Virus record (IMG/VR): IMGVR_UViG_3300032931_001151
Coordinates: 62,001-126,000 of that record
Length of the DNA stretch: 64,000 nucleotides
Strand: one strand, 5' to 3'
Part shown: piece by piece, positions 1 to 43,460 of the stretch
How positions within the stretch are numbered: the stretch's first letter is position 1
Layout: every line of letters starts with the position of its first letter
Program-made: the position numbers and the translations under genes
Notes under the pieces: model-generated
Told to the model about the DNA's origin: nothing
Databases searched by the model: none
The model's input: the letters and a program-made list of their open reading frames with translations, nothing else

Positions 1-38
1 AAGAAAAGAAACAAAATAACTCGTGAAAGGAGATTATT

Positions 39-218
39 ATGAAGTATATCGTAAGAAGCCGTACAACTGGTGGTAGATATCTCGTTGAGAGAGAAACCGG
101 AAAAAAGGCATACCGTTGGACCAAAAGAGCCGCTAAGGTTGCTCATCGTTTTACATCATATGATGCTGCCCAAAAAGCATCACAAAGATATAACGGCGAA
201 TTGATTAGCGTTAAGTAA
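39..218 (+). CDS. small basic hypothetical protein (59 aa, not in ORF track)
   Basis: AGGAG at 28-32, ATG 39, hand translation MKYIVRSRTTGGRYLVERETGKKAYRWTKR...ISVK, TAA 216-218, next gene starts at 221. Confidence 0.75.
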   Translation: MKYIVRSRTTGGRYLVERETGKKAYRWTKRAAKVAHRFTSYDAAQKASQRYNGELISVK

Positions 219-220
219 TT

Positions 221-409
221 ATGCCGAGATATGACTATCAATGTGAAAAGTGTGAACACATTCAAGAGGAATCGCATCCTATAAACGGACCTATTGAATG
301 TATTATTTGTGAAAATTGTAAGTCTAAAAAGATGGTAAAAGTAGTTTCCGCCCCCTATGTGCGATTCATAGGGGACTGGCAAACTAATGATGTTAGAAAA
401 ACTAATTAA
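221..409 (+). CDS. FmdB-family zinc-ribbon protein
   Basis: MPRYDYQCEKC...CENCKS...KVVSAP..F.G.W matches the FmdB CxxC-CxxC pattern. Confidence 0.85.
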   Translation: MPRYDYQCEKCEHIQEESHPINGPIECIICENCKSKKMVKVVSAPYVRFIGDWQTNDVRKTN

Positions 410-418
410 GGAAATACA

Positions 419-724
419 ATGAATAAAAAGATTTTTCTTGTAATGCGGGATCCCAAAACCGAACTAGAAACTCATATGGAATGGGAAGGACATGATTCAT
501 TAGAAGATGCCAAAAAAGAATATACCAATATTCGTAATATGTCTATGCAAGAAGGAGTAAAACCAATTGATGGTTTCGTGTATGAGGCCGATATCCCAGA
601 GTATGGCAATGTTGCCGAGAAACTTGATATGGCGGAATTAGCCAAACATTACGAGAATAAAGTAATGGATATGAACTTCTCGGATCCTCTTACTCCACAG
701 TTTGAAGTAATTAACAATGACTAA
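419..724 (+). CDS. hypothetical protein
   Basis: AAGGA RBS, tight packing with neighbours. Confidence 0.75.
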   Translation: MNKKIFLVMRDPKTELETHMEWEGHDSLEDAKKEYTNIRNMSMQEGVKPIDGFVYEADIPEYGNVAEKLDMAELAKHYENKVMDMNFSDPLTPQFEVINND

Positions 725-1238
725 TTACCTAAAAGGTAAAACGGTTTATTTGGCCGGAAGTATTCACCACAACGACGAAGATTCGGGTGTTGGTTGGAGA
801 GAATCTATAACCCCAAAATTAGAAAAATTTGGAGTTAATGTACAAGATCCATGTAAAAAAACTATTAATGGGGTTGGGGAAGTTGGCGACGATAAAAAAG
901 AATTAATAGATTTAATTAAAAGAAAGAAATTTTTGGATGTTAAAGAGAGATTTTTTCCAATACTAAAAGCAGATTTAAGATGTGTGGACATATCGCATTT
1001 CGTTATTGTCAATTATAGACCAAAAATTAGGCATATTGGAACCATCCATGAACTAGTTATGGCAAATATAGAACGCAAGCCTATACTTCTTTATTATCCC
1101 GAAAATGAATTAGAAGATTTCAATCCGTGGATAGCATGTCTTATTAAATCCAATCACATTTTCGACGATTGGAATAAAATGTTTGATTATTTAACTGAAG
1201 TAGACAAGGGAAACTTTGATACCTCTTTATGGTACTAA
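717..1238 (+). CDS. nucleoside 2-deoxyribosyltransferase-like / (d)NMP N-glycosidase
   Basis: VYLAGSI, WRE, DLRCVD, GTIHEL motifs of the NDT/Rcl fold. Confidence 0.8.
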   Translation: MTNYLKGKTVYLAGSIHHNDEDSGVGWRESITPKLEKFGVNVQDPCKKTINGVGEVGDDKKELIDLIKRKKFLDVKERFFPILKADLRCVDISHFVIVNYRPKIRHIGTIHELVMANIERKPILLYYPENELEDFNPWIACLIKSNHIFDDWNKMFDYLTEVDKGNFDTSLWY

Positions 1239-1248
1239 AAGGAACTAT

Positions 1249-1449
1249 ATGTTAAAAATACCATTACTAAAGGGTTGCGACGATTTAGATTTAATTAGAA
1301 TGAGATCCTTATTAGAATCTACTCTAAAATCCGTTGAAGTTGAAATATACGATAGACTAATTCCCAAACAAGTTGTAACTCACAATAGTAAAACGTTAAC
1401 TCTTCAATATATCATTGAAGACCATGAAATAGAACTTAATTTTAAATAA
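1249..1449 (+). CDS. hypothetical protein
   Basis: AAGGA RBS precedes ATG 1249 (MLKIPLL), preferred over the track start at 1216. Confidence 0.6.
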   Translation: MLKIPLLKGCDDLDLIRMRSLLESTLKSVEVEIYDRLIPKQVVTHNSKTLTLQYIIEDHEIELNFK

Positions 1450-1460
1450 AGGAATCTAAA

Positions 1461-1628
1461 ATGAAAATGAAGACAACCCAAATAGTATCGGTAACAAATG
1501 AAGAAGTTATTAGATACCTCACTAAAGTAGTTGAGAAGAAAACGGGAAAGAAAGTAGTTAAAGTAACCGAACCTTTTGATTTCCATCTTCAAGATGAGGA
1601 AGCCGATCTAGATAAGGAGCAAGCTTAA
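1461..1628 (+). CDS. small hypothetical protein (55 aa, not in ORF track)
   Basis: AAGGA RBS, MKMKTTQIVSVTNEEVIRYL...DKEQA, fills the gap exactly. Confidence 0.7.
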   Translation: MKMKTTQIVSVTNEEVIRYLTKVVEKKTGKKVVKVTEPFDFHLQDEEADLDKEQA

Positions 1629-1629
1629 T

Positions 1630-1917
1630 ATGCCTTATATCAAACAAGAAGATCGCACTAAGTTTAACGAAGATGCCGTTAGACTTGGAACAAAAGCGGA
1701 ATGTGCAGGCGATTTAAACTATGCCATCACCGTTATATTGCACACTTATCTTAAAAAGAAGGGTATTAGATACTCCAATCTCAATGAGGTAATTGGAATG
1801 CTTGATTGTGCAAAGATGGAATTATATAGATCAATTGCGGGTCCTTACGAAGATATTAAAATTAAAGAATCTGGTCTAGTAGGTCTAATATCCGAATTTG
1901 GCGGCCCAACCCCATAA
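1630..1917 (+). CDS. conserved phage helical protein (MPYIK...GDLNY...CAKMELYR family)
   Basis: Recognisable motif set common in phage nucleotide-metabolism regions; function unknown. Confidence 0.75.
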   Translation: MPYIKQEDRTKFNEDAVRLGTKAECAGDLNYAITVILHTYLKKKGIRYSNLNEVIGMLDCAKMELYRSIAGPYEDIKIKESGLVGLISEFGGPTP

Positions 1918-1922
1918 TAATT

Positions 1923-1958
1923 AATCCCTTTTTGATATAATATATGTAAGAAGGGATT
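1923..1958 (+). promoter_or_regulatory. hairpin with extended -10 (TGaTATAAT) in the loop and RBS in the 3' arm
   Basis: AATCCCTTTTT (1923-1933) pairs with AAGAAGGGATT (1948-1958); TATAAT 1936-1941; ATG 1963. Confidence 0.65.
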
Positions 1959-1962
1959 TGAT

Positions 1963-2217
1963 ATGGAACAACTTGTTTGTACTTTAGAATCGGTATCGGG
2001 ATGTGGGTTACAAACAATCCAAATATTTACTCCTAAAGTAATTAAAGTAAACGACAAACTAAATAATTTAATAGATTATTTAGTTTTTTGTAATGGAGAT
2101 GATTATATTTTAGTGTTACCACCTAGAGATATTCACAAAGAAGCATTAAAAATAAAATGTTTATATCCTCTATTAGAAGTCGAAGTTATAAATACAAGGA
2201 TAAAACTATCCTTCTAA
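1963..2217 (+). CDS. hypothetical protein
   Basis: AAGGGA RBS, open frame. Confidence 0.65.
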   Translation: MEQLVCTLESVSGCGLQTIQIFTPKVIKVNDKLNNLIDYLVFCNGDDYILVLPPRDIHKEALKIKCLYPLLEVEVINTRIKLSF

Positions 2218-2225
2218 AATATAAA

Positions 2226-2253
2226 TTGACAAATTATGTTTATGCAATAAAAT
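2226..2253 (+). promoter_or_regulatory. sigma70-type promoter
   Basis: TTGACA 2226-2231, 16-nt spacer, TAAAAT 2248-2253, then AAGGAG RBS. Confidence 0.7.
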
Positions 2254-2272
2254 CATGTGAAGGAGAACACGA

Positions 2273-2719
2273 ATGACTAAAACAAATAAAATAGAAAAAC
2301 ATTATTTAGTGGTATGCGATGTAGGCCCACTTATTATGACCGAGAATAAAGATAAGGCTATTAATTCACTTAAAATAGCGAGACTAAAAGGTCATAGGGG
2401 GTATGTACAAGAAATAACAGCATCCACCGAAAGACTTAAAGAAATAGGGAAGAATCTTTTTAAACGAAAAATATCGCCCAATGAAAGAATGAATATACTC
2501 ATTACAAGAGGAAAAATAATTCGTGAATTCATTGATGTCCGTGATGATAATGATTTTACCGATGAAGTTGCTTGGAAAAAAGTTACAAAGAATAACCAAT
2601 TAACAGGATTTAGCGACTTGGACGATTTTAGTCAATGGACCCTTGATGTCCGTGAATTCAATCCCCACGACAACCCTAAATTACTATTAGACGAGGGAAT
2701 TGATGGATCAGATAATTGA
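2273..2719 (+). CDS. hypothetical protein
   Basis: Strong AAGGAG RBS and upstream promoter. Confidence 0.75.
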   Translation: MTKTNKIEKHYLVVCDVGPLIMTENKDKAINSLKIARLKGHRGYVQEITASTERLKEIGKNLFKRKISPNERMNILITRGKIIREFIDVRDDNDFTDEVAWKKVTKNNQLTGFSDLDDFSQWTLDVREFNPHDNPKLLLDEGIDGSDN

Positions 2720-3032
2720 TAGAATAAATAAACTCTCTAAAAGTGATAATAAAAACTTACTAGAAACTTGTATAAAAATTCAGGAAGAAGTTGGAGAATT
2801 GTCCGCAGAACTTCTTAAAATAAGAGGTAAAAAAGGCTCTAATGGACAATTAAGGTTTCAAATTGAAGAAAATATACTAGAAGAATGTTGTGATGTGCTT
2901 ATTATGGCATTTTCTTTATTAAATAAATTTAAGTTCAATAGAACTAAGATTAAAAAAGCATTTAATAAAAAACTTGATAAAGCTGAGATTAACATTAAGA
3001 AACAAAAAATATGGAAGAAACAAATTAAATGA
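2703..3032 (+). CDS. MazG-like NTP pyrophosphohydrolase
   Basis: KIQEEVGELSAE ... EECCDVLI acidic metal-binding motifs; ATG 2703 follows GAGGG. Confidence 0.8.
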   Translation: MDQIIDRINKLSKSDNKNLLETCIKIQEEVGELSAELLKIRGKKGSNGQLRFQIEENILEECCDVLIMAFSLLNKFKFNRTKIKKAFNKKLDKAEINIKKQKIWKKQIK

Positions 3033-3271
3033 ATATTAATGATGCGATTAAAATTATGAAGTTTTCAGTTAAAAATGAAATTGCTAAAGCCTACTTAGAA
3101 ACACTAGAATACTCAATAGACGATCACGGAACCCATGGGTTAGTAAATCAGTTGAATTATATTATGTGCAATGTTTCCTCATGGAAAGGTTCTCAAGCAA
3201 AAGAAGTCAAAACCTTTGTAAAAGATTGGATTAAAGAAAAAAATGGAAATAATACAATCTCCCCCCGATAA
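3029..3271 (+). CDS. hypothetical protein
   Basis: ATGA overlap with upstream stop. Confidence 0.7.
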   Translation: MNINDAIKIMKFSVKNEIAKAYLETLEYSIDDHGTHGLVNQLNYIMCNVSSWKGSQAKEVKTFVKDWIKEKNGNNTISPR

Positions 3272-3680
3272 GTGGATTAAACATTGGCTTAAAATAGCAC
3301 TTGTTACGTCCGAATTAAGCAAAGATCCTCGAACAAAAGTCGGCGCTTGCGTGGTAACACCTGACAATAGGCAATGTTCATTAGGTTATAATGGATTTGC
3401 TAATGGCATTGAAGACTTAGCAGAACGATGGAATAATAGAGCAATTAAATATGAATTTTGTATTCATGCCGAAGAAAATGCTATTATTAATAGCCCGTTT
3501 GACACTAAAGGGTGTACTTTATTTTGCACTCTTCAATGTTGCCATAAATGCATGGCAAGAATAGTTAGAGCGGGAATTAAAAAAGTTTACTATCTAAAGC
3601 CATATGACAATATAACTCATCTTGACATTATTGAAGCCCATTCAAAACTACTTGACGAGATAAGACAAGTTTCTATATAG
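3243..3680 (+). CDS. dCMP deaminase
   Basis: SKDPRTKVGA, GYNG, HAEENA and CxxC (CCHKC) zinc motifs. Confidence 0.92.
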   Translation: MEIIQSPPDKWIKHWLKIALVTSELSKDPRTKVGACVVTPDNRQCSLGYNGFANGIEDLAERWNNRAIKYEFCIHAEENAIINSPFDTKGCTLFCTLQCCHKCMARIVRAGIKKVYYLKPYDNITHLDIIEAHSKLLDEIRQVSI

Positions 3681-3693
3681 ACTTACAAAGAAC

Positions 3694-3720
3694 TTGACTT
3701 TCCAAAAAGTACTATATAAT
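3694..3720 (+). promoter_or_regulatory. probable sigma70-type promoter for rIIA
   Basis: TTGACT 3694-3699, TATAAT 3715-3720 (15-nt spacer, suboptimal), intergenic. Confidence 0.5.
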
Positions 3721-3756
3721 TACCCTCAAGATAACCAACATTATTAAGAGGAATTT

Positions 3757-5943
3757 ATGAAACTCGACTTTGATACTACAATTATTGAAAGATCCGAAGA
3801 CTTTGAGGAGCAAACTTTCGGATTCTCCGATGTTACAATAGTCATGGAAATTCTTAGGTCAAAACTCTATTCAAACCCTATTAAGGTGTTAGTTCAAGAA
3901 TATATGAGTAATGCCCGTGATGCTCATAGAGAAATTGATAATAATCAACCCATTGAAGTTCAATTGCCTTCCCACATTTCGCCACAATTTGAGGTTAGAG
4001 ATTTTGGCCCCGGAATAACACCAAAAAGAATGAGTAACGTATTCATTAAATATGCGGCATCAACAAAGCGAGACTCTAATAAGATGACTGGTGGGTGGGG
4101 ATTAGGATCAAAGAGTGGTTGGAGCTATTCCGACACTTTTAGTGTAATATCTATTACTAACGAAACCGGTGAAAATATTAAAAGAACTTATTCTTGCATC
4201 ATTGATGAAACTCGTAATGGTAAACTCGTGAAAATGTGCGACGACGCAAAAACCGAAGAACCATGTGGTACTCGTATCATTGTGCCGGCTCGTAAAGAAA
4301 ATTTCAATCAATTTAGAGACTATGCGGTTCAAACGGGAACCCTATGGGAAGTGAAACCAATAATTTTTGGCCAAACCATTAATAACCCATCCATCATTAG
4401 CGAAGGTGCTAATTGGAAGTATTTTGAGCGTCACACTGTTCCTACCGACTTTATATCTAATAAAGCATTTGTTGTATATGATGGGATTCCTTATCCTTTA
4501 AAAACCGAAACTTTAAAAAATTTGATTTCGGATGAGGTAATGGCTGTACTAAATAGTTCTTGTTTCGGTCTATATTTTAATATTGGCGATATTACTATCT
4601 CCGCTAACCGTGAGGAAATTCAATATACGGAGAAAACTAAAAACACATTAGCAACCCGAGTAAACGAGATGGTATCCGAGATAGCAAGTAAATTCTCGGA
4701 TACTATTCAACAAGAGCCAACATTCATTGACGCTCTTATGAAGTTTAATGACATTTCTAAAGAGAATGACGTAATCGCCAAACTTATTAGCAATTCGGTT
4801 GAATGGAACGGAACCAAACTCCACCGTATTAACCAACTTAATACTATGGATAAGGCTGTTAAAATTGAAAATTTCTATTACGATGATGGTAAACTATGCC
4901 ATATTAGGAATGCCTATGTACATCTAGAAAATAAAGATAAATTTAAAAAAATCTATATTAATGATGAAAAACTTCGTGGTGCTCCAATTTCTAAAATGCG
5001 TGGGTTGTTTTATTCTAGTTCTAAATCAGACCAGGAATCGTTTGATGTTTATGTTATCTCATATCAAACCAATAACCCCAAAGGTCTATCACAACAAGAA
5101 ATTGATAATGCAAATGTAAGTATTAATAAGTGGAATAAAGAAAACTTTATTGGTTTAATGGATCTACAAACTACATCATCCATCAAAAAATCAATAATCC
5201 CAAAAGGAATTTCTCAACCTAAAGTGATAGGAAAACTTGTAACCTATAGAGAGTTGAAATTAAACGTAGGATCCGATTATGCGGTTACTATAGAACATGA
5301 GGATATTGATAGCACATTAAGCGGATATTATACTCTAATACATGAAGGAAGATTTTCAATTGGAGGATCGAGATACAATATTAGAGATTCGTGGGAAATG
5401 AGAAATCTACACCGTAGATTAAAATTAGTTCTAAGCCACTTAAAAGTTGATAAAATTCTTTTATTTACTCAAAAGTACACGAAAAATATCTCCGAAAATA
5501 AGAATTTAATTCATTTGCCTATAGATATTTCAAAAGATATTGTAAATTCGTTTGATTCTAATAAGATAAAAGAATATACTAAGTATGTTCGTGGAGATAA
5601 AATGTATAATCACGAATTCTTTAAACTACTAAGTCCCATGAAACATATGGATAGATTTAATGTTGGTAGTAAGATTAGAGAGAAGTTAGAGTCAATGTTA
5701 CATAATGAAAAATATATTGCCACTCAAGAATATAAAGAAATGAATTCTTTATATGAAGAATTTAATCACGTTATTAAAGATCTATATAAAGTAGATGGCG
5801 ATTCCACCCAAGACGAAGACTCTTTTTCTAAAAAATATCCGCTTTTATCTGATAGGTATTATGGGTATCATACTAGTAGTAATGAAACATTCGTTGAGCA
5901 TGCGATTAACTATATTAATTTTGTTGACAATGGTAAAAATTGA
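3757..5943 (+). CDS. rIIA: RIIA-like protein (N-terminal GHKL ATPase)
   Basis: LYSNPIKVLVQEYMSNARDAH, VRDFGPG, STKR..N..GGWGLGSKS, ISANREEIQY; followed by rIIB. Confidence 0.9.
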   Translation: MKLDFDTTIIERSEDFEEQTFGFSDVTIVMEILRSKLYSNPIKVLVQEYMSNARDAHREIDNNQPIEVQLPSHISPQFEVRDFGPGITPKRMSNVFIKYAASTKRDSNKMTGGWGLGSKSGWSYSDTFSVISITNETGENIKRTYSCIIDETRNGKLVKMCDDAKTEEPCGTRIIVPARKENFNQFRDYAVQTGTLWEVKPIIFGQTINNPSIISEGANWKYFERHTVPTDFISNKAFVVYDGIPYPLKTETLKNLISDEVMAVLNSSCFGLYFNIGDITISANREEIQYTEKTKNTLATRVNEMVSEIASKFSDTIQQEPTFIDALMKFNDISKENDVIAKLISNSVEWNGTKLHRINQLNTMDKAVKIENFYYDDGKLCHIRNAYVHLENKDKFKKIYINDEKLRGAPISKMRGLFYSSSKSDQESFDVYVISYQTNNPKGLSQQEIDNANVSINKWNKENFIGLMDLQTTSSIKKSIIPKGISQPKVIGKLVTYRELKLNVGSDYAVTIEHEDIDSTLSGYYTLIHEGRFSIGGSRYNIRDSWEMRNLHRRLKLVLSHLKVDKILLFTQKYTKNISENKNLIHLPIDISKDIVNSFDSNKIKEYTKYVRGDKMYNHEFFKLLSPMKHMDRFNVGSKIREKLESMLHNEKYIATQEYKEMNSLYEEFNHVIKDLYKVDGDSTQDEDSFSKKYPLLSDRYYGYHTSSNETFVEHAINYINFVDNGKN

Positions 5944-5951
5944 TATATAAT
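5924..5951 (+). promoter_or_regulatory. sigma70-type promoter for rIIB overlapping the rIIA 3' end
   Basis: TTGACA 5924-5929, 16-nt spacer, TATAAT 5946-5951. Confidence 0.75.
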
Positions 5952-5977
5952 AAACAAATAACTTTTAGGAGAACACC

Positions 5978-6958
5978 ATGAGATATCTTATAACCCCCAA
6001 ATGCATTTCTTTAAATTACGATGGAAATACTAAAGTAGTTGAGAAAACGGATAGTCGTTTCCAACCAATTATAGACGCCATTAAAGCCAAAAACTTTGAC
6101 GTAATTCCCGGAATTATTGATGGACTTAAAAACGCCATTGCAACTAGTACAAATAAGGATTTTAAAGTTGATAATGGTTTAGTATATATTGATAATAAAT
6201 CAGTTGGTGGTAGAATTAGCGAAAAGATCGTTGAGTATGTAAATGCTGGACTAGATCCAATTAGCCTTGTTAATTTTTGGAGGAATTTACAATTAAATCC
6301 TTCATATAGAGCAAGAGAGGCGTTATTTTCCTTCCTTGAAAATGGGAATCATCCTATTACGGACGATGGGCACTTTATCGCATATAAGAAAGTACGAAGC
6401 AATATGAAAGACGGTCATAATGGGACTTTTGATAACTCTGTTGGGGCTAAACCATCAATGCCACGAGATCAAGTTGACGACGATCCGACACACACTTGCG
6501 CTCCAGGGCTGCATGTGGCGTCCTGGGAGTATGCACAAAACTATAGTGGAACGGTTCTTATTGATTGTAAGGTAAATCCCATGAATGTCGTTGCCGTCCC
6601 AATTGATTATAATTTTATGAAGATGCGTACTTGTGGATATGAAGTTATTGCCGTGGCTAAAGAGAAAAGGCAAGAGCTACATATTAGCGACAATAAAGAT
6701 ATTACTAGCGATGACGCTACGGATATTGATCCTGATGATATAAATCTAAATGATAATAATGAAGATTTTGACTATAATAATATGGATAATGTTGACTACC
6801 AACAAGGCGTGGACGACGCTAACGCTTTGATAACTTACTTCAAGTCAATTGGAAGAGAATATACTTACGACGAGTTCATTGAACTAAAGAGATTTGAGAA
6901 TAAATCGGATAGTTACAAATGTGGAATTGAGGAAGTGGCAGACGAAAAACTATCTTAA
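5978..6958 (+). CDS. rIIB: RIIB-like protein
   Basis: FWRNLQLNPS, LFSFL, ITDDGHFIAYKKVR, MPRDQVDDDP..TC..GLHV, KVNP.NVVAVP.DY. Confidence 0.92.
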   Translation: MRYLITPKCISLNYDGNTKVVEKTDSRFQPIIDAIKAKNFDVIPGIIDGLKNAIATSTNKDFKVDNGLVYIDNKSVGGRISEKIVEYVNAGLDPISLVNFWRNLQLNPSYRAREALFSFLENGNHPITDDGHFIAYKKVRSNMKDGHNGTFDNSVGAKPSMPRDQVDDDPTHTCAPGLHVASWEYAQNYSGTVLIDCKVNPMNVVAVPIDYNFMKMRTCGYEVIAVAKEKRQELHISDNKDITSDDATDIDPDDINLNDNNEDFDYNNMDNVDYQQGVDDANALITYFKSIGREYTYDEFIELKRFENKSDSYKCGIEEVADEKLS

Positions 6959-6975
6959 ATTTAAGTAGATTTTGG

Positions 6976-7011
6976 AATCCCCTTGGGTATAATTACTCAA
7001 GGGGATTTTTT
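6976..7011 (+). terminator. terminator-like hairpin with TATAAT at the loop and the next gene's RBS in the 3' arm
   Basis: AATCCCCTTGGGTA / TACTCAAGGGGATT 14-bp stem (one G-U), T-run, ATG at 7012. Confidence 0.75.
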
Positions 7012-7677
7012 ATGGAAAATATTATTGAAATTGAGTTAAATCCGGAATTTCATATAAGCAAATTTCTAACCACTAACGTTAGAAAGTTGGCATTGTACAT
7101 TCCTACTATTGATCAATTAATGCCAACCGAAAGTAACTATTTTGGTCTAAAGGAGATGACATATGGTAATATCATATTAGATCAAGAAAGCGGATTGGTG
7201 GCTTTAACGGTTAGACAATTCTTTAAAGCATTACTTTCAAATATGCCATATGCGTATGAAATCGCTTGCACTCCCCATTCCAATATAGTAGCGGATTCCC
7301 AATTAGGATTTGAAATATTAAATTTCGGAAAAACCCATCTTATTTCTAAGCCCATTATAGATAAGTACTTAAAAAGCTTCACAGAAGATAAAATAACGGG
7401 GAATTATACAAGAGCATATAGAATCGGAACCGTTCTAAAGAGATTGTATAGAGGATTAAGAACTACCGAAATGACGAACGAAGAAACCGAATTATATAAC
7501 CACTTATTAAGTGATACCGTTAAATTAGAAGATATTGAATTTTCTTTAACGCATATGGATGTTGAATTCCAATCTATTGAGCCTACTATAAACTATAATG
7601 ATATATTTCCACCAATTGATATAAATTACATAAATCAATTTTTAATTCAAACCCATAAGGATTACTTAAAACTATGA
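7012..7677 (+). CDS. degenerate Pol-beta-superfamily (YcgL/RlaP-like) nucleotidyltransferase
   Basis: LYIPTIDQL and VRQFFKALLSNMPYAYEIACTP and RAYRI resemble the family's downstream motifs; no GS..YG....SDxD. Confidence 0.5.
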   Translation: MENIIEIELNPEFHISKFLTTNVRKLALYIPTIDQLMPTESNYFGLKEMTYGNIILDQESGLVALTVRQFFKALLSNMPYAYEIACTPHSNIVADSQLGFEILNFGKTHLISKPIIDKYLKSFTEDKITGNYTRAYRIGTVLKRLYRGLRTTEMTNEETELYNHLLSDTVKLEDIEFSLTHMDVEFQSIEPTINYNDIFPPIDINYINQFLIQTHKDYLKL

Positions 7678-8000
7678 CATTAGAAGAAGATGTTACTTGG
7701 ATTATGGAGAGATGTCCGAAATTAAACTCTTTAGCCGTTTTAGAGCCATCAGCACAAGCAATTGCTATTATGTTGGCAATCGGGGGAAATAACCCCTTCA
7801 ATGAACAAGAAATGGCTAAACTATCGCTTGTTGGCATCATAGCCATGCATTGCCGCAAAATAGATGAAGAAAGATTTCAAACGTTGTCTCCTTACGCTTA
7901 CTTACAAATTGCCAACGCTTATATAGATGAAAATGATACATCGGGGGTTAATTATAAGGAACTCGTAAATAAAATTAAAAATATTATAAAGTTAATTTAA
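7674..8000 (+). CDS. hypothetical protein
   Basis: ATGA overlap. Confidence 0.7.
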   Translation: MTLEEDVTWIMERCPKLNSLAVLEPSAQAIAIMLAIGGNNPFNEQEMAKLSLVGIIAMHCRKIDEERFQTLSPYAYLQIANAYIDENDTSGVNYKELVNKIKNIIKLI

Positions 8001-8004
8001 TTAA

Positions 8005-8012
8005 TATAAATA
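8005..8012 (+). promoter_or_regulatory. T4-type late promoter TATAAATA
   Basis: Exact octamer in a 28-nt intergenic gap just before AGGAG RBS and ATG 8029. Confidence 0.55.
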
Positions 8013-8028
8013 GGTTTAGGAGATACAA

Positions 8029-8334
8029 ATGGATAATTTTTCTACTTGGTACTACAATAATAAGAATAAAAAAGTTGACGTATCAATGGCACCATCAGAA
8101 AAGATGTTTTTTGATGTTGTTGGTATAAAAATTCCATCTCTTAAGGCTTTCATATCTTGGTTAATATTGAAGAAATTGATTAATCCAATAATTAAAGAAA
8201 AAGATAAGAAAACATTGAATTTATTGTCCTTACCGGTTGAAAAAAAAGTTCATTATCTCGTTAGTAAATTGAAAGATATAGATAAACTAGCTAATGAGTA
8301 TAATAAAATATTTGGGGAATCGCCCAAAGAATAA
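8029..8334 (+). CDS. hypothetical protein, probably late-expressed
   Basis: AGGAG RBS, late-promoter motif. Confidence 0.7.
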   Translation: MDNFSTWYYNNKNKKVDVSMAPSEKMFFDVVGIKIPSLKAFISWLILKKLINPIIKEKDKKTLNLLSLPVEKKVHYLVSKLKDIDKLANEYNKIFGESPKE

Positions 8335-8368
8335 TTAAGTTTATCTTGTGAATTAATGAAAGGCTGTT

Positions 8369-8542
8369 ATGATATTATTCATAGGTATGATTTTATGCTC
8401 ATTGATTTTATGGGCATTCTCTCACTTTGGAATTAAAAATTACGAATACGATCACGAAGAAAGTATGCTTACTGCTAAAATAGTTAATTTAATAGTATTT
8501 GCTATATTGTTAACATTAATAAGTTTGAAGCATTTTTTATGA
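8369..8542 (+). CDS. small two-TM membrane protein (57 aa, not in ORF track)
   Basis: AAGG RBS; MILFIGMILCSLILWAFSHFGIKNYEYDHEESMLTAKIVNLIVFAILLTLISLKHFL has two hydrophobic stretches. Confidence 0.7.
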   Translation: MILFIGMILCSLILWAFSHFGIKNYEYDHEESMLTAKIVNLIVFAILLTLISLKHFL

Positions 8543-8577
8543 ATTTGGAAGTATAATAACAATTAAGGAGAACATTT

Positions 8578-8805
8578 ATGTCATATGCTACATCACAGGG
8601 TAAAGCCTACACTCTAATGGATCTTGAAAGACTTGCAAAAGTTGAGACTTTCGGACAATTCACCGGAGCTATCTTAGGACTTATCCAAAGATCCAAACAA
8701 CTTGAAGCTGAAAACGCCTTCTATAAAAAGAATGCATTAGATGCCGAATCATATAAAAGCCAATTGATGGAATTAAGAAGAGAAGTAAACGAATTAAAGA
8801 AGTAA
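8578..8805 (+). CDS. hypothetical coiled-coil protein
   Basis: AAGGAG RBS, TATAAT at 8552. Confidence 0.75.
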   Translation: MSYATSQGKAYTLMDLERLAKVETFGQFTGAILGLIQRSKQLEAENAFYKKNALDAESYKSQLMELRREVNELKK

Positions 8806-8808
8806 AAT

Positions 8809-9939
8809 ATGAAAAGCGAACAAGTTAATTTATTTAAGAATATTCTTGAAATTAGTAGCGACTTACCTATATATCTATATGGTAAGTCGCTATTGTTTCT
8901 ATTTTTAAATAGAGAACCCAATTCTATTGACTTGTTCATAAAAAGCAAACACGTTTCAGAAGAAGTAATATTTAAATTAAAAAGTTTGAGTGATAAGATT
9001 AATGTATCTTTTGGAAAAGAACTAGTTTTTGATTCCGAAATATTCACAATTAATTGTATTTCTTGTGAATTGAGAAATGTTCTTGAAAAAATCGGAAGCA
9101 TTGAAGGTAAACACCTAACATTAAACGACCTTCAAAAAAGAATTATTAGATTTATTGATAAAGATGGATCATCTAAAAATCCTAAACATATTATGGAAGC
9201 CATACTATTTTCGGGAGAAATAGACTTTAATCTTGAAATAGATACAATGAAACATATCTTTGTTAATAAATCAATAGTTAAACAACTCGTGAAAAGAGAT
9301 ATATTTCACTTAATAAAAAACATATATTTTAAGAGTGAGAAACCAAGAAAAACAATATCATTACTTAATACTCTTGGTATATCATTTGAATTATTTGATA
9401 CTATATTAGTGGAATCGGCAGTTCTTAATAATCTTGGAAAGAAAGATGTTAATGAATTTTTCGCATTAATATTTAATAATATTGATGAAGAACAACAAGA
9501 AAAATTCTTTATTGAAAAGGTAGGATTTCATTTAAGGGATGTTGATAAGGTATTACAAGTAACTAAAATATTAAATAGTGTTAATTCCCAAGATCCTACC
9601 CCGTTAAATGCTCGAAAGATGCTAAAAGTATATGGTAAGGATAGGGCTATGAGTCTTTATAGATTATTTAAAGCTATAGGATTAATAGAGTTATCTCAAC
9701 TTATCAAGTCAGAAAAGAATTCCCCAATAGAAATTGGTGATTTGTGCATAGATAAAGATTATATTAGTAAAGCATTTGGTGTAAATGAAGATGTGGCCAA
9801 AAAACTACTTGATTTGGCAATTGATATCGTTATAATTCAACCTGAGTTAAACGAGCCGATAAAACTTTTAAATGCTATTAATAAAAACCCACTAAAAAGG
9901 AACTTTCTATGCCAAGAGGAAGAAAAAAGAATTCTTTAA
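8809..9939 (+). CDS. CCA-adding enzyme / poly(A) polymerase homologue with degenerate catalytic motifs
   Basis: IYLYGKSLLFLFLNREPNSIDL, FTINCI, LNDLQKRIIRF, NPKHIMEAILF, IGDLCIDKDYI..FGV align in order with class II CCA motifs. Confidence 0.75.
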   Translation: MKSEQVNLFKNILEISSDLPIYLYGKSLLFLFLNREPNSIDLFIKSKHVSEEVIFKLKSLSDKINVSFGKELVFDSEIFTINCISCELRNVLEKIGSIEGKHLTLNDLQKRIIRFIDKDGSSKNPKHIMEAILFSGEIDFNLEIDTMKHIFVNKSIVKQLVKRDIFHLIKNIYFKSEKPRKTISLLNTLGISFELFDTILVESAVLNNLGKKDVNEFFALIFNNIDEEQQEKFFIEKVGFHLRDVDKVLQVTKILNSVNSQDPTPLNARKMLKVYGKDRAMSLYRLFKAIGLIELSQLIKSEKNSPIEIGDLCIDKDYISKAFGVNEDVAKKLLDLAIDIVIIQPELNEPIKLLNAINKNPLKRNFLCQEEEKRIL

Positions 9940-10496
9940 AAAAGAAAAACTCTTCTAAAAATGTTTCTAAAGAAGTACAAGATATATTCTTTAATACAGA
10001 CATTAAAGACGAAGAAGAAATTGTTGATACTACAACGGAAGAGACAATAGAATCTCCGGAAGAGATCCTATCAACGCTAGATGAAGATAAAGAGGTTGAA
10101 GTACCCGAAACCGTGCCTATTCCAGATGGTAGCATTAACGATACCGAACAATTTACGGTAGTTGCTTCATATTCCGATGACGGCGAAGAAGTTAAAACTG
10201 TACAATGTATAAGAAAAAATCAACCACCACCCGAATCTACTTGGGCCGATAAAAAATGTAAGTTTAAGTGTGGACAAAAAATAATGCCTAGAGTAATAAA
10301 GAAAAAAGACATCCCAAATTATGAATGTGCCGTCGTTATTAGCCCCGGAACGTATCCCGACACATATATAATTAAAATATCTAGATCGTTAAATGAAACA
10401 CAAGTTATAGGAAATAATTGGGAAGAGGCAAGTGATAAATGTAAGCCATACGTTAGTTTTTGGGAAGCTAATTCACCACCAAAAAGGATTTTATGA
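9909..10496 (+). CDS. hypothetical protein (basic N-terminus, acidic middle)
   Basis: AAGGA RBS, open frame. Confidence 0.7.
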   Translation: MPRGRKKNSLKKKNSSKNVSKEVQDIFFNTDIKDEEEIVDTTTEETIESPEEILSTLDEDKEVEVPETVPIPDGSINDTEQFTVVASYSDDGEEVKTVQCIRKNQPPPESTWADKKCKFKCGQKIMPRVIKKKDIPNYECAVVISPGTYPDTYIIKISRSLNETQVIGNNWEEASDKCKPYVSFWEANSPPKRIL

Positions 10497-10978
10497 TTGA
10501 TACTTCCAATCCCATAGTATTAGTAGGAGTTGGAGCGCCAGGTAGTGGAAAATCTACTTGGTGGAGTGAAGGATTGAAAAATGGACTAATTCCAAGACAA
10601 TCTACTAGAATAAATATGGATGAAATTAGATTACATTTAACGGGAAGCGAATCCGACCAAAGTCAAAATAATACTGTTGCTAAATTGGCCGAAGAACAAT
10701 TAAAATCTAATTTGTCAAACAAAACTCCGGTAATCTTTTGGGATAACACCTCGGCTAAACGGAAATATAGAAAATCTATAATTGACTTGGCTAAAATGTC
10801 TAATTATAAGATAATCGCAATATATTGGGATATACCACTACAAACTTGTTTGGAACGCAACAAAAGTAGGGCACGGATGGTCCCCGAAGATGTTATTCTT
10901 AAAATGTATAATAGCATTAAAGAGATTCCTCCTACTAAAAATGAAGGTTTTGATGATATAATAGTTATCAACAATTGA
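10493..10978 (+). CDS. polynucleotide-kinase-like P-loop kinase (AAA_33)
   Basis: GAPGSGKST, DEIR, WDNT...KYRK, CLERN..R.R.VP..VI..M, EGFD. Confidence 0.88.
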   Translation: MIDTSNPIVLVGVGAPGSGKSTWWSEGLKNGLIPRQSTRINMDEIRLHLTGSESDQSQNNTVAKLAEEQLKSNLSNKTPVIFWDNTSAKRKYRKSIIDLAKMSNYKIIAIYWDIPLQTCLERNKSRARMVPEDVILKMYNSIKEIPPTKNEGFDDIIVINN

Positions 10979-10987
10979 AAGGGCTTT

Positions 10988-11500
10988 ATGGCAAACTTTG
11001 AAAATAAAGATACACCAAGCAAACTTGATACTGGATGGAAAGAAGGCGCTTATATTAAATCTATAATTGATATTGATAGCGGGGATCCATCATACGAAGA
11101 TAAAGATTGTACTACTTTATCATTTGCTTGGTTTAGAGTTGAATCAAATATGCAACCTTCTCAAAAAGAAGAAATAGAGAAACAAGAAGCAATGAAAAAG
11201 CAATACGACTTAAAAGTCATTAATAAGTATGGAATGCCATATGGCATGCCTATGCCAAAAGAAGTTAAAGATAAGATCCGTAAAATGGAAGAGGAACAAG
11301 CTCAAAAAAGTAATAAGTGGATGAAAAAGAGACAAAAACTTATAAACAAACAAATTGAAAAAGATATGAAGAAGAAGAAAATTGATGAGGAAAGACAAAA
11401 ATCAGCATTGCTAGTAGATAATAGCACGTCATCTAATACTAGTAACATAATTGACGCCAATAAACCAATATCACCAACATTGCTAACATTTTTGAAGTGA
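10988..11500 (+). CDS. hypothetical protein
   Basis: AAGGG RBS, charged helical protein. Confidence 0.7.
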   Translation: MANFENKDTPSKLDTGWKEGAYIKSIIDIDSGDPSYEDKDCTTLSFAWFRVESNMQPSQKEEIEKQEAMKKQYDLKVINKYGMPYGMPMPKEVKDKIRKMEEEQAQKSNKWMKKRQKLINKQIEKDMKKKKIDEERQKSALLVDNSTSSNTSNIIDANKPISPTLLTFLK

Positions 11501-11504
11501 TATT

Positions 11505-12152
11505 ATGAAATATATATTTTTATTTGGCCATAGACAACAACACGGAAAAGATACTTGTTGCAATATTCTTGAAAATATATTAAAGAAGAAGAAAATATCA
11601 CATGCACGTACATATTTTGCAAAATTACTTAAGAAACAAGTATCGGAAAGATATAATCTAAATTTTGAAAAAATGGAAAATAATGATTATAAGTTGTGGT
11701 GCCCACCACATATAAAAAAGAAAATTGTTAGAACTACTGAAGGTCTAACACACGAAGTTATGAGAACCGTTAGAGATATACTAATAGAAGAGGGATGCAA
11801 AGGTAGAGAAATTTGGGAAAATACTTGGGCAAATGCGGCATATATGGAGTTATTTAGAGCCAATCCGGAAATAGGAATAATAAGCGACTATAGATATCCC
11901 TCTGAGTATATTACATTTTCTGCATCATTTGAAACATTTGAGAAAGAATACGAGAAGATTGAAAGACCTATACCTATTAGAGTATTGGTCCATAGACCTA
12001 ACGGAGTATTCAAAACCGACGGGGCTGACGGGGAGTTGCCCGACATAGACCCAATTGCCTGGGATTATGTTATATTAAATGATAAAAGCGTTGGATGGGA
12101 AGAGCATTTGGAGAATCAATTAGAAGACATACTTAAAAAATTAGGAGTTTAA
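11505..12152 (+). CDS. deoxynucleoside monophosphate kinase (T4 gp1-like)
   Basis: GHRQQHGKDT, FAKLLK, RDIL, ISDYRYPSE, DYVILND. Confidence 0.85.
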   Translation: MKYIFLFGHRQQHGKDTCCNILENILKKKKISHARTYFAKLLKKQVSERYNLNFEKMENNDYKLWCPPHIKKKIVRTTEGLTHEVMRTVRDILIEEGCKGREIWENTWANAAYMELFRANPEIGIISDYRYPSEYITFSASFETFEKEYEKIERPIPIRVLVHRPNGVFKTDGADGELPDIDPIAWDYVILNDKSVGWEEHLENQLEDILKKLGV

Positions 12153-12153
12153 A

Positions 12154-12441
12154 ATGGCCTTTAGATTTATAAAACTTAATAGAGCGAAGTGTTTGACTTG
12201 CGGCGATACTTTAATTTCAAAATCGGAAAGTGCAAGCACTCCGATTACTTGTAGTTGTGGAGGTTTAACCATTTCAGGTGGAGCAACCCATTCAATTAGA
12301 ACTGGTAAAAATTACAAAGATATGTGTATATTAGACTTTTCGGATTGCCCAGAAGTATCAATCGATACTCCAATCCCGCCTCCGGGAAGTGAAATAACTC
12401 CCGAAGAACTTGATGAAAGAAAGAGATACATCAAACAATAA
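12154..12441 (+). CDS. zinc-finger protein (CxxC...CxCG..ISGG)
   Basis: NRAKCLTCGDTLIS...TCSCGGLTISGG, a common phage small-protein pattern. Confidence 0.75.
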   Translation: MAFRFIKLNRAKCLTCGDTLISKSESASTPITCSCGGLTISGGATHSIRTGKNYKDMCILDFSDCPEVSIDTPIPPPGSEITPEELDERKRYIKQ

Positions 12442-12452
12442 AGGATCAACGT

Positions 12453-13067
12453 ATGTCATTCCAAGTAAAAACCCCGGAACAAGAAGTTAAAATTCCAGAA
12501 TATTGGAATGTTATATTTTTAAATGGTGAAATAAACGAAGGAACCGCTATTGATATATCTCAACGGTTGCTTTCAATTGATTTAATAAATCAAAATCTTG
12601 ATAAGCCTGAGCCAGTTAACTTAGTAATTAATAGTGGTGGCGGATCTTTAAATGCGGCTTGGCAAATTTGTGATATGATGGATTTTATAGATACTCCGGT
12701 CTATACAGTTGGTCTTGGAGTAATAGCTAGTGCGGCTCTTGTTATTTTTATGAACGGCAATAAAGGACATAGAATACTATCAAGTCGTTGCTCTTTAATG
12801 TCCCATCAATATTCATGGGGAGCGGTCGGAAATCACTCCGATTTATTAGCAGTTAGAAAAGAGCAAGATGTTACCATGGCAAAAATTCTAAAGCACTATA
12901 AAGAAACGACTAAACTATCGGAAAAAGTTATTACTGCCAATTTATTAAAAGAACACGATGTATGGTTAACACCCGAAGAAGCTATTAAATTTCACATAGC
13001 GGATAAAATCGTAACCACTAAAAAGAAAAAGAAAATAAATGGAAGAACGTCTAAAATCTCCAAGTGA
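12453..13067 (+). CDS. clpP: ClpP protease subunit
   Basis: INSGGG, GVIASAA (catalytic Ser), MSHQ (His), HDVWLTPEEAIKFHIAD (Asp). Confidence 0.92.
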   Translation: MSFQVKTPEQEVKIPEYWNVIFLNGEINEGTAIDISQRLLSIDLINQNLDKPEPVNLVINSGGGSLNAAWQICDMMDFIDTPVYTVGLGVIASAALVIFMNGNKGHRILSSRCSLMSHQYSWGAVGNHSDLLAVRKEQDVTMAKILKHYKETTKLSEKVITANLLKEHDVWLTPEEAIKFHIADKIVTTKKKKKINGRTSKISK

Positions 13068-13821
13068 GCTAATAGTACCAAACTTATCCAAATTAATACT
13101 TGATAATGATGAATTATCAAGTATTAATAAGTTTGAATCGGTTAATGTATCATTAGTTGCTCAAAATGGACTTGATATAGTTGAATCTATTAGAAATACA
13201 AATTTAATAACCGAAGAAGATGCGAAAAACATTAAGAATGCTCACGATTTCTTATTATCATCTTATACGGACGTTATTATCTATAACACAAGAATAGCAA
13301 AAGTAACTTCTATATTGTCTGATGGAAAATTCCCAACTAACGATTCTAAATTCTGGCAATGTAAAATGCAAGCGGAAGTTCATTTTAACGAATTTATACG
13401 AGCACTATATAAGTTAGATAGAGTAAAAATTGATATTGAAGAAATACAATATCAAATATTATGTCTTGATAATATGCTTAACAATGAAAATTCGGAAACT
13501 TCACAAATGGATAAAATAAAATTATCATTTGATAAGAGGCGGTTGGTTAATAAATTAAATCAATATATTCATGAAATGAAGTTACTTGAAAAAGATATTA
13601 AACAAAGACTCCGTGAAATAAACGATTGGTCAGAAATAGCGGAAGGATTTAAGAGTGCATGTGTGCATAGTACTTCCAATTATGAAGAACATACTATTAA
13701 TAGTCACATATTAGCATTACAAAATTATGTAAATAACGCTAAAACTCCCGAAGAAAAGAAGAACTTTGTTGACCAACTTAATACATTCTTAAGATTACTA
13801 GGAAAGCCGCCGATTAAATAA
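13039..13821 (+). CDS. conserved phage coiled-coil protein (FPT.DSKFWQC motif)
   Basis: SILSDGKFPTNDSKFWQC ... RLREINDWS; function unknown. Confidence 0.7.
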   Translation: MEERLKSPSELIVPNLSKLILDNDELSSINKFESVNVSLVAQNGLDIVESIRNTNLITEEDAKNIKNAHDFLLSSYTDVIIYNTRIAKVTSILSDGKFPTNDSKFWQCKMQAEVHFNEFIRALYKLDRVKIDIEEIQYQILCLDNMLNNENSETSQMDKIKLSFDKRRLVNKLNQYIHEMKLLEKDIKQRLREINDWSEIAEGFKSACVHSTSNYEEHTINSHILALQNYVNNAKTPEEKKNFVDQLNTFLRLLGKPPIK

Positions 13822-14536: not shown

Positions 14537-14549
14537 ATTGTTTTCCTAA

Positions 14550-15110: not shown

Positions 15111-15113
15111 AAA

Positions 15114-15521: not shown

Positions 15522-15525
15522 TTTA

Positions 15526-16761: not shown

Positions 16762-16772
16762 TTTTATTCCTT

Positions 16773-26360: not shown

Positions 26361-26368
26361 TATTTACC

Positions 26369-26839: not shown

Positions 26840-26863
26840 ATCCTATTCCTTTAGTATTATTTA

Positions 26864-27799: not shown

Positions 27800-27814
27800 T
27801 TAATTCTTTCCCTT

Positions 27815-28648: not shown

Positions 28649-28651
28649 TTT

Positions 28652-33676: not shown

Positions 33677-33686
33677 TCATTGACCT

Positions 33687-39422: not shown

Positions 39423-39431
39423 TGCGTTTCC

Positions 39432-43046: not shown

Positions 43047-43058
43047 TTTAGTGTACCC

Positions 43059-43448: not shown

Positions 43449-43460
43449 ACAATAATAGAA

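What the first reader, a model, noticed from the sequence alone, without database searches (positions are those of the whole stretch)
3781..4800. Strong CAG/CTG depletion with excess CCG/CGG
Seen (hand count, 3781-4800): 0 CAG and 3 CTG versus 14 CCG and 12 CGG. In AT-rich DNA, CWG should outnumber CSG by roughly two-fold. A 600-nt sample of the giant fibre gene (20041-20640) gave 6 versus 9, the same direction but weaker. Third positions appear pushed to C/G before G (ACC GAA, TCG GAT). Inference: long-term selection against a CAG-containing target such as RM, BREX or modification-dependent systems, or a constraint from the phage's own DNA modification.
Basis: seen in the sequence. Interest (0 to 1): 0.6.

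Follow-up and report, generated by a model that had tools for sequence, protein, structure and literature searches.

The report
Phage genome purged of CAG trinucleotide
A 214-kb T4-like phage and its closest relatives avoid the three-base word CAG (CTG on the other strand) about ten-fold wherever the protein code allows, which points to something unidentified, probably in the host, that reads a site only three bases long.

Summary
The hand counts are exact (0 CAG, 3 CTG, 14 CCG, 12 CGG).

- **Extent.** Across the whole 214,200-bp phage genome, CAG/CTG is the most depleted trinucleotide (0.41 of expectation, z about -41). It stays the most depleted under shuffles that keep amino acids and codon usage (1403 versus 2813, z -42).
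- **Motif.** The avoided word is bare 5'-CAG-3' on either strand. Flanking bases, orientation, spacing, genome region and gene class make no difference.
- **Mode.** At freely variable positions the odds of completing a CAG fall about 7-10-fold, whichever of the three motif positions is free. Intergenic DNA is depleted too. This fits weak per-site selection on the DNA word, not codon usage or C-to-T decay alone.
- **CCG/CGG excess.** It is the by-product: xCN codons before G switch from A/T to C/G.
- **Distribution.** Seven genomes with DNA polymerase at least 76% identical share the trait; syntenic relatives at 57% or less do not.
- **Phage genes.** No DNA methyltransferase, phosphorothioation or base-replacement gene was found.

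The agent and the host remain unknown. A host system with a 3-nt target is the best guess; the phosphorothioate consensus C*AG is the only published precedent found here.

The parts
1..64000 (.). The whole window is CAG/CTG-depleted DNA. It is part of a genome-wide feature of a 214,200-bp phage genome (window = genome 62001-126000).
   Evidence: Window CAG+CTG 467 against about 1130 expected. Every 10-kb bin of the genome is at 0.21-0.53. The odds ratios at free positions are uniform across genome regions.
3781..4800 (.). The flagged stretch: 3 CWG against 26 CSG.
   Evidence: 21.8 CWG expected, Poisson P = 7e-7.
3757..5943 (+). rIIA homologue (728 aa). This is the gene that contains the flagged stretch.
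   Evidence: PHROG 612 'RIIA lysis inhibitor', E = 5e-87, full length.
5978..6958 (+). rIIB homologue (326 aa), next to rIIA.
   Evidence: PHROG 609, E = 3e-62.
3243..3680 (+). dCMP deaminase (145 aa). It is one of the three nucleotide-pool enzymes found (with dUTPase and a dCTP-deaminase-like protein); none is a DNA-modifying enzyme.
   Evidence: PF00383, E = 1.3e-19, at genome 65270-65596.
16773..26360 (-). It shows the same avoidance; the raw depletion is weaker only because more sites are fixed by the protein.
   Evidence: ORF list. Sample counts 6 against 9. Odds ratios for the tail/fibre block are 0.125/0.162/0.163.

Best explanation
The genome is under weak but pervasive selection against the DNA word 5'-CAG-3' on either strand. 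Wherever one base of a potential CAG can change without changing the protein, and in intergenic DNA, the CAG-forming base is avoided about 7-10-fold. Before G, xCA and xCT codons are replaced by xCC and xCG, and this produces the CCG/CGG excess. Before AG or TG, NNC codons become NNT. CAG becomes CAA, and CTG becomes CTA or TTG. Shown: the avoidance is at the DNA level, is symmetric between strands, does not depend on context, is equal at all three motif positions, and is confined to one subclade of T4-like huge phages. Inferred: the pressure comes from outside the phage, most probably from a host DNA-targeting system whose recognition element is only three bases long. Each site would then carry a small additive cost, such as a nick, a backbone or base mark, or a targeting opportunity, rather than an all-or-none restriction cut. 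About 1450 sites remain, and the population-scaled selection is only about 2 per site. The only published CAG-specific prokaryotic DNA mark found here is the phosphorothioate consensus C*AG. A system of that kind, or a frequent nicking enzyme, is the leading candidate but is not demonstrated.
For: - Specificity: CAG/CTG is the top depleted 3-mer under the Markov null and under the amino-acid/codon-preserving null.
- Frame-crossing depletion beyond codon usage: xCW|G 587 and 626 against 1071 and 1087 (z -21); xxC|WGx 36 and 48 against 335 and 214.
- Free-position statistics: the C fraction of NNY is 0.02 before AG and 0.05 before TG, against 0.18-0.30 elsewhere. CAG is 4% of CAR and CTG 2% of CTR, against 13-37% for other NNR pairs. 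Intergenic CAG is 0.27 and CTG 0.21.
- No flank dependence. No orientation or spacing signal among the 1454 remaining sites, 716 CAG and 738 CTG.
- Odds ratios when position 1, 3 or 2 of the motif is the free one: 0.104, 0.119 and 0.151. They are the same in every genome region and gene-size class. They are replicated in independent relatives at 0.09-0.21, while outgroups give 0.96-1.36.
- Distribution: seven genomes from seven samples with PolB at least 76% identical have CAG at 0.32-0.60. Five syntenic outgroups at 57% or less have 0.96-1.40, including one at the same 31% G+C. 43 wider relatives give 0.85-1.40. 67 bacterial loci give 0.60-1.59.
- The same subclade also lacks CGCG entirely and strongly avoids TCGA, which is classical restriction-site avoidance and fits unprotected DNA under host nuclease pressure.
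- No phage-encoded DNA-modification enzyme was found.
- Precedent for a 3-nt CAG mark: the phosphorothioate consensus C*AG, 16,317 sites in a human gut PT-seq data set (PMC11931770).
Against: - The host is unknown, so no cognate system has been shown.
- No restriction enzyme or methyltransferase with a bare CAG site turned up in the literature searches.
- It is not established that phosphorothioate-linked restriction depends on the number of consensus sites in the invading DNA.
- About 1450 sites remain, so a true cutter at CAG would still destroy the genome. The agent must therefore act with very low probability per site or be met rarely.
- Equal odds ratios at the three positions could also come from a process that raises the mutation rate across the whole motif.
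- A phage-encoded cause specific to the subclade cannot be excluded, because only one complete genome of the subclade was available.
Confidence: 0.5

Rival explanations
1. Motif-targeted hypermutability. CAG is marked on the phage DNA, for example by a host cytosine methyltransferase or by nicking and repair, and decays faster than it arises. This would resemble CpG decay and needs no selection on the site itself.
For: The depletion is partial, like CpG decay. The transition products CAA/TTG are the most significantly over-represented trinucleotide (1.22, z +27). CTG, which has two synonymous transition exits, is rarer than CAG as a codon (17 against 89).
Against: Deamination of methyl-C affects only the C and the G of the motif. 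Yet the middle position, when it is the only free one, is shifted just as strongly: odds ratio 0.151 against 0.104 and 0.119, and in relative L013 even more strongly, 0.105. No CAG/CWG methyltransferase of bacteria was found in the literature searched. The phage has no methyltransferase. A process that mutates all three positions equally, or second-order selection against a mutation-prone site, remains possible.
Confidence: 0.15
2. A phage-intrinsic constraint. An enzyme of this subclade itself acts on CAG, for example a host-DNA-degrading nickase, a primase or a packaging or processing nuclease, or the phage carries a DNA modification that cannot cover CAG. The phage then thins out its own sites.
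For: The trait follows phage phylogeny sharply, present at 76% PolB identity or more and absent at 57% or less. The genome encodes several nucleases: HNH proteins and a PD-(D/E)XK protein at window 53224-54012. It also has an unusually large set of glycosyltransferase and sugar-nucleotide genes, some inside the replication module.
Against: No enzyme with known short-site specificity was found, and no methyltransferase, hydroxymethylase, DpdA or PT gene. The GT2, epimerase and RmlD-like genes of the replication module are also present in the non-depleted relatives. The co-inherited total loss of CGCG and the strong loss of TCGA point to host nucleases acting on unprotected DNA. A phylogenetic boundary is equally expected from a host switch.
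Confidence: 0.12
3. CRISPR PAM avoidance. CAG is the protospacer-adjacent motif of the host's CRISPR-Cas system, and fewer PAMs mean fewer targetable protospacers.
For: A PAM is 2-3 nt long, counts on both strands, is independent of context, and gives a small additive cost per site. All of this matches.
Against: No natural CRISPR system with a CAG PAM was found. From my own knowledge, reported PAM depletion in phages is weak, far from a 7-10-fold effect. The host and its CRISPR type are unknown.
Confidence: 0.07
4. The depletion is the sum of several ordinary 4-8-bp restriction or BREX sites that contain CAG.
For: The genome does avoid many palindromes: CGCG 0 against 193 expected, TCGA 0.31, AGCT 0.47. 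CTGCAG is nearly absent.
Against: All sixteen NCAGN contexts are depleted. At synonymous sites the flanks do not matter. GCWGC (118), CCWGG (150), CTGGAG (38) and CTGAAG (55) are present at or above what their CAG content predicts. Under maximal-order Markov nulls no CAG-containing 4-, 5- or 6-mer is depleted beyond the 3-mer effect.
Confidence: 0.03
5. Codon usage, translational selection or an RNA-level effect, or an assembly or sequencing artefact.
For: CAG and CTG are rare codons in many AT-rich genomes.
Against: The depletion is as strong across codon boundaries, on both strands relative to transcription (712 CAG and 691 CTG on coding strands), and in intergenic DNA. An artefact cannot respect the reading frame, and the pattern recurs in seven independent assemblies from JGI and Logan.
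Confidence: 0.02

Closest known systems
Restriction-site (palindrome) avoidance in phage genomes
   Same: A specific short DNA word is under-represented relative to composition- and codon-preserving nulls. The profile is lineage-specific and present on both strands. It sits alongside classical avoidance in the same genome: CGCG absent, TCGA 0.31, AGCT 0.47.
   Different: The word has only 3 bases and is not a palindrome. No cognate enzyme is known. The avoidance is partial (1454 sites remain) and corresponds to weak, uniform selection per site rather than near-elimination of a few dozen sites.
Phosphorothioate DNA modification with 3-nt consensus (Ssp-type C*CA; C*AG seen by PT-seq in gut bacteria, PMC11931770)
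   Same: This is the only published prokaryotic DNA mark found here whose consensus is bare CAG. It is a single-strand 3-nt motif, it belongs to defence-linked families (Dnd, Ssp, BREX type 4), and its sites are modified only in part, so a graded effect per site is plausible.
   Different: Nothing links this phage or its unknown host to such a system. The phage has no PAPS-reductase-type PT gene. Avoidance of PT consensus sites by phages has not been reported in what I could search.
Frequent-cutting or nicking enzymes with 2-4-nt sites of chloroviruses (Nt.CviPII CCD, Nt.CviQII RAG, CviJI RGCY); recalled from my own knowledge, not tested
   Same: They show that nucleases with 3-nt recognition exist. 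With such enzymes, damage scales with site density, which would give an additive cost per site.
   Different: They are encoded by algal viruses with matching methyltransferases. No homologue was looked for or found here.
CpG depletion through methyl-cytosine deamination
   Same: Partial depletion of a very short word, with excess of its transition products (CAA/TTG 1.22).
   Different: Here the middle base of the motif is shifted as strongly as the outer C and G. Deamination does not predict that.

Membership tests
Restriction-site avoidance | The word is significantly under-represented against nulls that keep composition, amino acids and codon usage. | tested here: met
   z -41 (Markov). z -42 (synonymous shuffle). 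Frame-crossing phases z -13 to -22.
Restriction-site avoidance | The word equals the recognition site of an R-M system of the host. | not testable with these tools
   The host was not identified. No enzyme with a bare CAG site was found in the literature searches.
Restriction-site avoidance | Sites are nearly eliminated, so the genome can escape cleavage. | tested here: not met
   1454 CAG/CTG sites remain, one per 147 bp. By contrast CGCG is 0 of about 193 expected.
Phosphorothioate (Dnd/Ssp/BREX-4) target motif | The consensus of the modification equals the avoided word. | tested here: inconclusive
   C*AG is reported as a PT consensus in gut bacteria (PMC11931770). No link to this phage's host is shown.
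Phosphorothioate (Dnd/Ssp/BREX-4) target motif | PT-synthesis genes (PAPS-reductase-type DndC, SspD or BrxP) are present in the phage or its host. | tested here: not met
   No PF01507 match in the phage genome. The host could not be tested.
Methyl-cytosine decay (CpG-like) | Loss is confined to positions where the C, or the G opposite a C, can mutate. | tested here: not met
   The odds ratio with the middle base free is 0.151, against 0.104 and 0.119 for the outer bases. Replicated in relatives.
Codon-usage or translational bias | The effect is limited to in-frame codons of the coding strand. | tested here: not met
   Frame-crossing and intergenic depletion, equal for CAG and CTG on the coding strand.
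Self-protection by phage DNA modification | The phage encodes a DNA methyltransferase or a base-replacement or hypermodification pathway. | tested here: not met
   No match to PF00145, PF01555, PF02086, PF02384, PF00303, PF02511 or PF01702. Pfam sweeps of 183 further proteins list none; the list was cut at 25 of 46 families. The record is estimated 90% complete. The many glycosyltransferases have unknown targets.
CRISPR PAM avoidance | The word is the PAM of the host's CRISPR-Cas system. | not testable with these tools
   Host unknown. No natural CAG PAM found.

The most novel reading that the evidence does not exclude
Trinucleotide-level avoidance is the genomic footprint of a so-far uncharacterised class of anti-phage pressure that reads only three bases, for example a C*AG-type phosphorothioate system or a frequent nickase. 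It may be general among huge T4-like phages, each lineage avoiding its own 3-mer: CAG here, and possibly CCG and ACG in two other lineages. If so, phage genomes could be used to read the specificity of such systems and to predict hosts.
Probability: 0.35. Interest if true: 0.8.

Novelty: new variant of a known kind. Interest (0 to 1): 0.68.

Why it matters
Oligonucleotide avoidance in phages is normally read as the shadow of 4-8-bp restriction sites. Here the clearest compositional signal in a 214-kb genome is a bare 3-mer. It is avoided with the same strength at each of its three positions, and a sharp phylogenetic boundary separates phages that avoid it from syntenic relatives that do not.

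If a host system imposes it, the phage sequence reports that system's specificity without any culture. That gives a concrete, testable target: CAG in the hosts of this subclade. It is also a candidate first case of phages adapting to a 3-nt epigenetic or defence motif such as phosphorothioate C*AG.

The method is reusable. Odds ratios at the free position in each codon phase separate selection on a word from base-specific mutational decay. Practically, CAG content could serve as a host-range marker for this uncultured group.

Tried and rejected
**Host identification** (none succeeded)
- No sequencing run was listed for the window.
- A PolB profile found nothing in the species-genome collection.
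- The phage GDP-mannose dehydratase has only phage relatives above 72% identity and scattered bacterial hits at 61% or less.
- Sample and run accessions occur in no held paper.
- The 'provirus' label is not informative. The 3.3 kb trimmed from the source contig holds only small phage-like ORFs.

**Close cultured relatives.** None exists. The best rIIA hit is an uncultured 462-kb phage at 35% identity, and the best PolB hit is a cyanophage at 30%.

**Mechanism tests that came out negative**
- No orientation bias or runs, as Type III avoidance would give, and no spacing signal.
- No early/late or gene-size difference in avoidance strength.
- No extra depletion of longer CAG-containing recognition sites, apart from a mild one for CTGCAG and CACAG.
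- No sign that the amber-suppressor tRNA reflects TAG recoding linked to loss of CAG: only 15 TAG stops with short read-through extensions.

**Literature.** Searches for a bacterial CWG/CAG methyltransferase, a natural CAG PAM, or earlier reports of trinucleotide avoidance in phages found nothing relevant.

**Considered but not tested.** Primase recognition triplets, such as CTG for E. coli DnaG (my own knowledge), were set aside. I know of no cost to a phage of carrying priming sites, and no such avoidance in T4 or T7.

Full report
**Observation.** Positions 3781-4800 hold 0 CAG, 3 CTG, 14 CCG and 12 CGG, and the fibre-gene sample holds 6 CWG against 9 CSG. Local composition predicts 21.8 CWG in the flagged stretch (Poisson P = 7e-7). 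The window has 467 CAG+CTG against 910 CCG+CGG at 32% G+C. Base composition alone predicts roughly the opposite, about 1130 against 540.

**Extent.** The window is bases 62001-126000 of a single 214,200-bp virus record. Genome-wide, CAG/CTG is the most depleted trinucleotide, at 0.41 of the first-order Markov expectation (z -41). CCG/CGG (1.39) and CAA/TTG (1.22) are the most enriched. Each of the 22 10-kb bins is depleted, at 0.21-0.53.

I called 254 ORFs covering 93% of the genome and shuffled synonymous codons within each gene, which keeps protein sequence and codon usage.
- CAG/CTG remains the top depleted 3-mer, 1403 against 2813, z -42.
- The loss is in the frame-crossing phases, which codon usage cannot explain. 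xCW|G is 587 and 626 against 1071 and 1087. xxC|WGx is 36 and 48 against 335 and 214.
- xCC|G and xCG|G rise from 535 and 441 to 998 and 850.
- All eight 4-mers that contain CAG are depleted to 0.38-0.65, and none stands out. Under maximal-order Markov nulls no longer CAG-containing word is depleted further.
- The longest depleted motif is therefore CAG itself.

**Anatomy of the avoidance.**
- NNY codons use C in 2% of cases before AG and 5% before TG, against 18-30% before every other dinucleotide.
- CAG is 4% of CAR and CTG 2% of CTR, against 13-37% for other NNR pairs.
- xCN codons use A/T in 35-47% of cases before G, against 70-89% otherwise. CTN, GTN, GGN and CGN codons show no such shift.
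- Intergenic DNA is depleted to 0.27 (CAG) and 0.21 (CTG).
- At the synonymous NNY|WG sites the result is the same whatever the preceding or following base.
- The 1454 remaining sites are 716 CAG and 738 CTG, with random orientation and no spacing signal. On coding strands the two forms are equally frequent.
- The avoided object is a double-stranded DNA word, 5'-CAG-3' on either strand. It is not a codon, not an mRNA signal, and not part of a longer site.
- Known longer sites (GCWGC 118, CCWGG 150, CTGGAG 38, CTGAAG 55) occur at or above what their CAG content predicts.

**Selection or mutation.** Expressed as odds ratios, the chance that a free position completes a CAG is:
- 0.104 (95% CI 0.083-0.129) when the C is free;
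- 0.119 (0.098-0.145) when the G is free;
- 0.151 (0.138-0.165) when the middle base is free.

The values are the same in all six genome blocks and three gene-size classes, 0.06-0.18. The weaker raw depletion in structural genes therefore reflects protein constraint, not weaker pressure.

Independent relatives give 0.18/0.15/0.105, 0.115/0.093/0.124 and 0.17/0.135/0.21. Outgroups give 0.96/1.36/1.27.

Deamination of a methylated C would act on the outer positions only. Equal strength at the middle position is what selection on the presence of the word predicts. In a simple mutation-selection-drift reading this is a scaled coefficient of about 2 per site (inference). A process that mutates the whole motif, or second-order selection against a mutation-prone site, cannot be fully excluded.

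The CCG/CGG excess needs no separate cause. It is where xCA|G and xCT|G went.

**What the genome is.** It is a distant T4-like myovirus of jumbo size.
- Marker genes: rIIA (which contains the flagged stretch) and rIIB, a gp5-like hub, RNA ligase, family-B polymerase, UvsX, gp41-like helicase, gp46/47, gp32, portal, sheath and ribonucleotide reductase.
- It has 18 tRNA genes.
- No cultured phage is close: rIIA 35% to an uncultured 462-kb phage, PolB 30% to cyanophages.
- The IMG/VR 'provirus' label seems spurious.

**Phage-encoded modification.**
- Six-frame family searches of the genome found no C5, N4/N6, Dam or N6_Mtase methyltransferase, no PAPS reductase, no TGT/DpdA, and no ThyA-family or ThyX enzyme.
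- Pfam sweeps of 183 further proteins listed none. One list was truncated, and the record is estimated 90% complete.
- Present are dCMP deaminase (window 3243-3680), dUTPase and a dCTP-deaminase-like protein.
- The genome also avoids classical sites: CGCG 0 against 193 expected, TCGA 0.31, AGCT 0.47, and several 6-mers at zero. This suggests that its DNA is not generally shielded.

**Distribution.** I used PolB homologues and their roughly 7-23-kb, largely syntenic loci.

| Group | n | CAG obs/exp | Other traits |
|---|---|---|---|
| Subclade, PolB at least 76% identical (seven samples) | 7 | 0.32-0.60 | CCG 1.3-2.05; CGCG 0 in six of seven; TCGA 0.13-0.42 |
| Outgroups, PolB 49-57% (one at the same 31% G+C) | 5 | 0.96-1.40 | no shared pattern |
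| More distant relatives | 43 | 0.85-1.40 | |
| Bacterial loci from many phyla | 67 | 0.60-1.59 | never below 0.85 by the Markov measure |

The trait is a derived, actively maintained property of one subclade. At about 75-80% nucleotide identity between members, synonymous sites have probably largely turned over (inference).

**Mechanism.** Shown: DNA-level, strand-symmetric, context-free avoidance that is equal at all positions and specific to one lineage.

Inferred: because about 1450 sites remain, the agent cannot be an efficient cutter. Each site must carry a small additive cost. Candidates are a host system with a 3-nt recognition element that nicks, marks or targets at CAG.

The only published CAG-specific prokaryotic mark I found is the phosphorothioate consensus C*AG. 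It was detected by PT-seq at 16,317 sites in a human gut data set (PMC11931770). PT systems are defence-linked and modify only part of their sites. This is a lead, not a finding. Rivals are scored separately.

**Limits.**
- The host is unknown.
- Only one complete genome of the subclade was available.
- Gene calls are my own simple ORF calls.
- The Pfam sweeps used pseudo-alignments, so they give families and not always the carrier protein.
- No reads tool was used.

Noticed in passing
genome 208273-214085 (outside the window; L009): A cluster of 18 tRNA genes that includes an amber-suppressor tRNA (anticodon CTA). TAG ends only 15 of 254 called genes, but read-through extensions are short, so there is no sign of general TAG recoding.
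   Followed up: partly
window 54039-54716 (-): The 142-aa ORF at 54288-54716 ends in TAG and continues in frame for 82 codons across the next called gene (54039-54278). With the suppressor tRNA, this could be a programmed read-through fusion.
   Followed up: no
window 48787-50975, 57195-59884; genome 160709-162553, 177827-180152, 188895-192888: An unusually rich set of glycosylation genes for a phage: GT25 x4 (49561-50283, 50280-50975, 57195-58109, 58106-59884), a borderline GT8, GT2 x3, GT10 x2, GT29, GT1, NodZ, TOD1, GDP-mannose 4,6-dehydratase, several epimerases/reductases and a DegT aminotransferase. A GT2 lies next to UvsW, and an epimerase/RmlD pair lies next to gp32. This arrangement is conserved across the wider clade. 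The target (virion proteins, host surface or DNA) is unknown.
   Followed up: partly
whole genome; window included: Classical site avoidance: CGCG 0 observed against about 193 expected, TCGA 0.31, AGCT 0.47, CATG, TGCA and CTAG at 0.58-0.67, CTNAG (CTAAG/CTTAG 0.48). Zero copies of GGCGCC, GGTACC, GGTCTC, GAGCCC, AGGCCT, GACGTC and GGGCCC. Loss of CGCG and TCGA is shared by the CAG-depleted subclade.
   Followed up: partly
L039, L040 (IMG/VR 3300040801_000816, 3300007983_000181); L064-L069: Other lineages of the same wider phage group show their own context-independent trinucleotide deficits: CCG/CGG 0.26 in all flanks, and ACG/CGT 0.33-0.40. Both sit on a background of general CpG depletion of about 0.55-0.64. 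They may be analogous 3-mer avoidance with other specificities.
   Followed up: partly
whole genome coding regions: AGG/CCT is the second most depleted trinucleotide (0.78 of the synonymous-shuffle expectation, z -22). On coding strands AGG (1729) still outnumbers CCT (1064). The cause was not examined; avoidance of Shine-Dalgarno-like sequences is one possibility.
   Followed up: no
genome 1-42400 (L001-L003): The block of small genes encodes an Acb1-like anti-CBASS nuclease, Macro and NUDIX domains, a radical-SAM/SPASM protein, a nucleoside 2-deoxyribosyltransferase-like protein, a CCA-adding/poly(A) polymerase-like enzyme, PTH2, an isochorismatase, a papain-like protease and a class-3 lipase. 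This looks like a counter-defence and host-takeover repertoire.
   Followed up: no
genome-wide: dCMP deaminase, dUTPase and a dCTP-deaminase-like protein are present, but no ThyA or ThyX thymidylate synthase was detected. The record is estimated 90% complete.
   Followed up: partly
window 46894-48054 (+); genome 142081-143889 (-): Large HNH/homing-endonuclease-like genes. The second has a weak partial match to a Mom-like PHROG. There is also a PD-(D/E)XK nuclease at window 53224-54012 (-).
   Followed up: no
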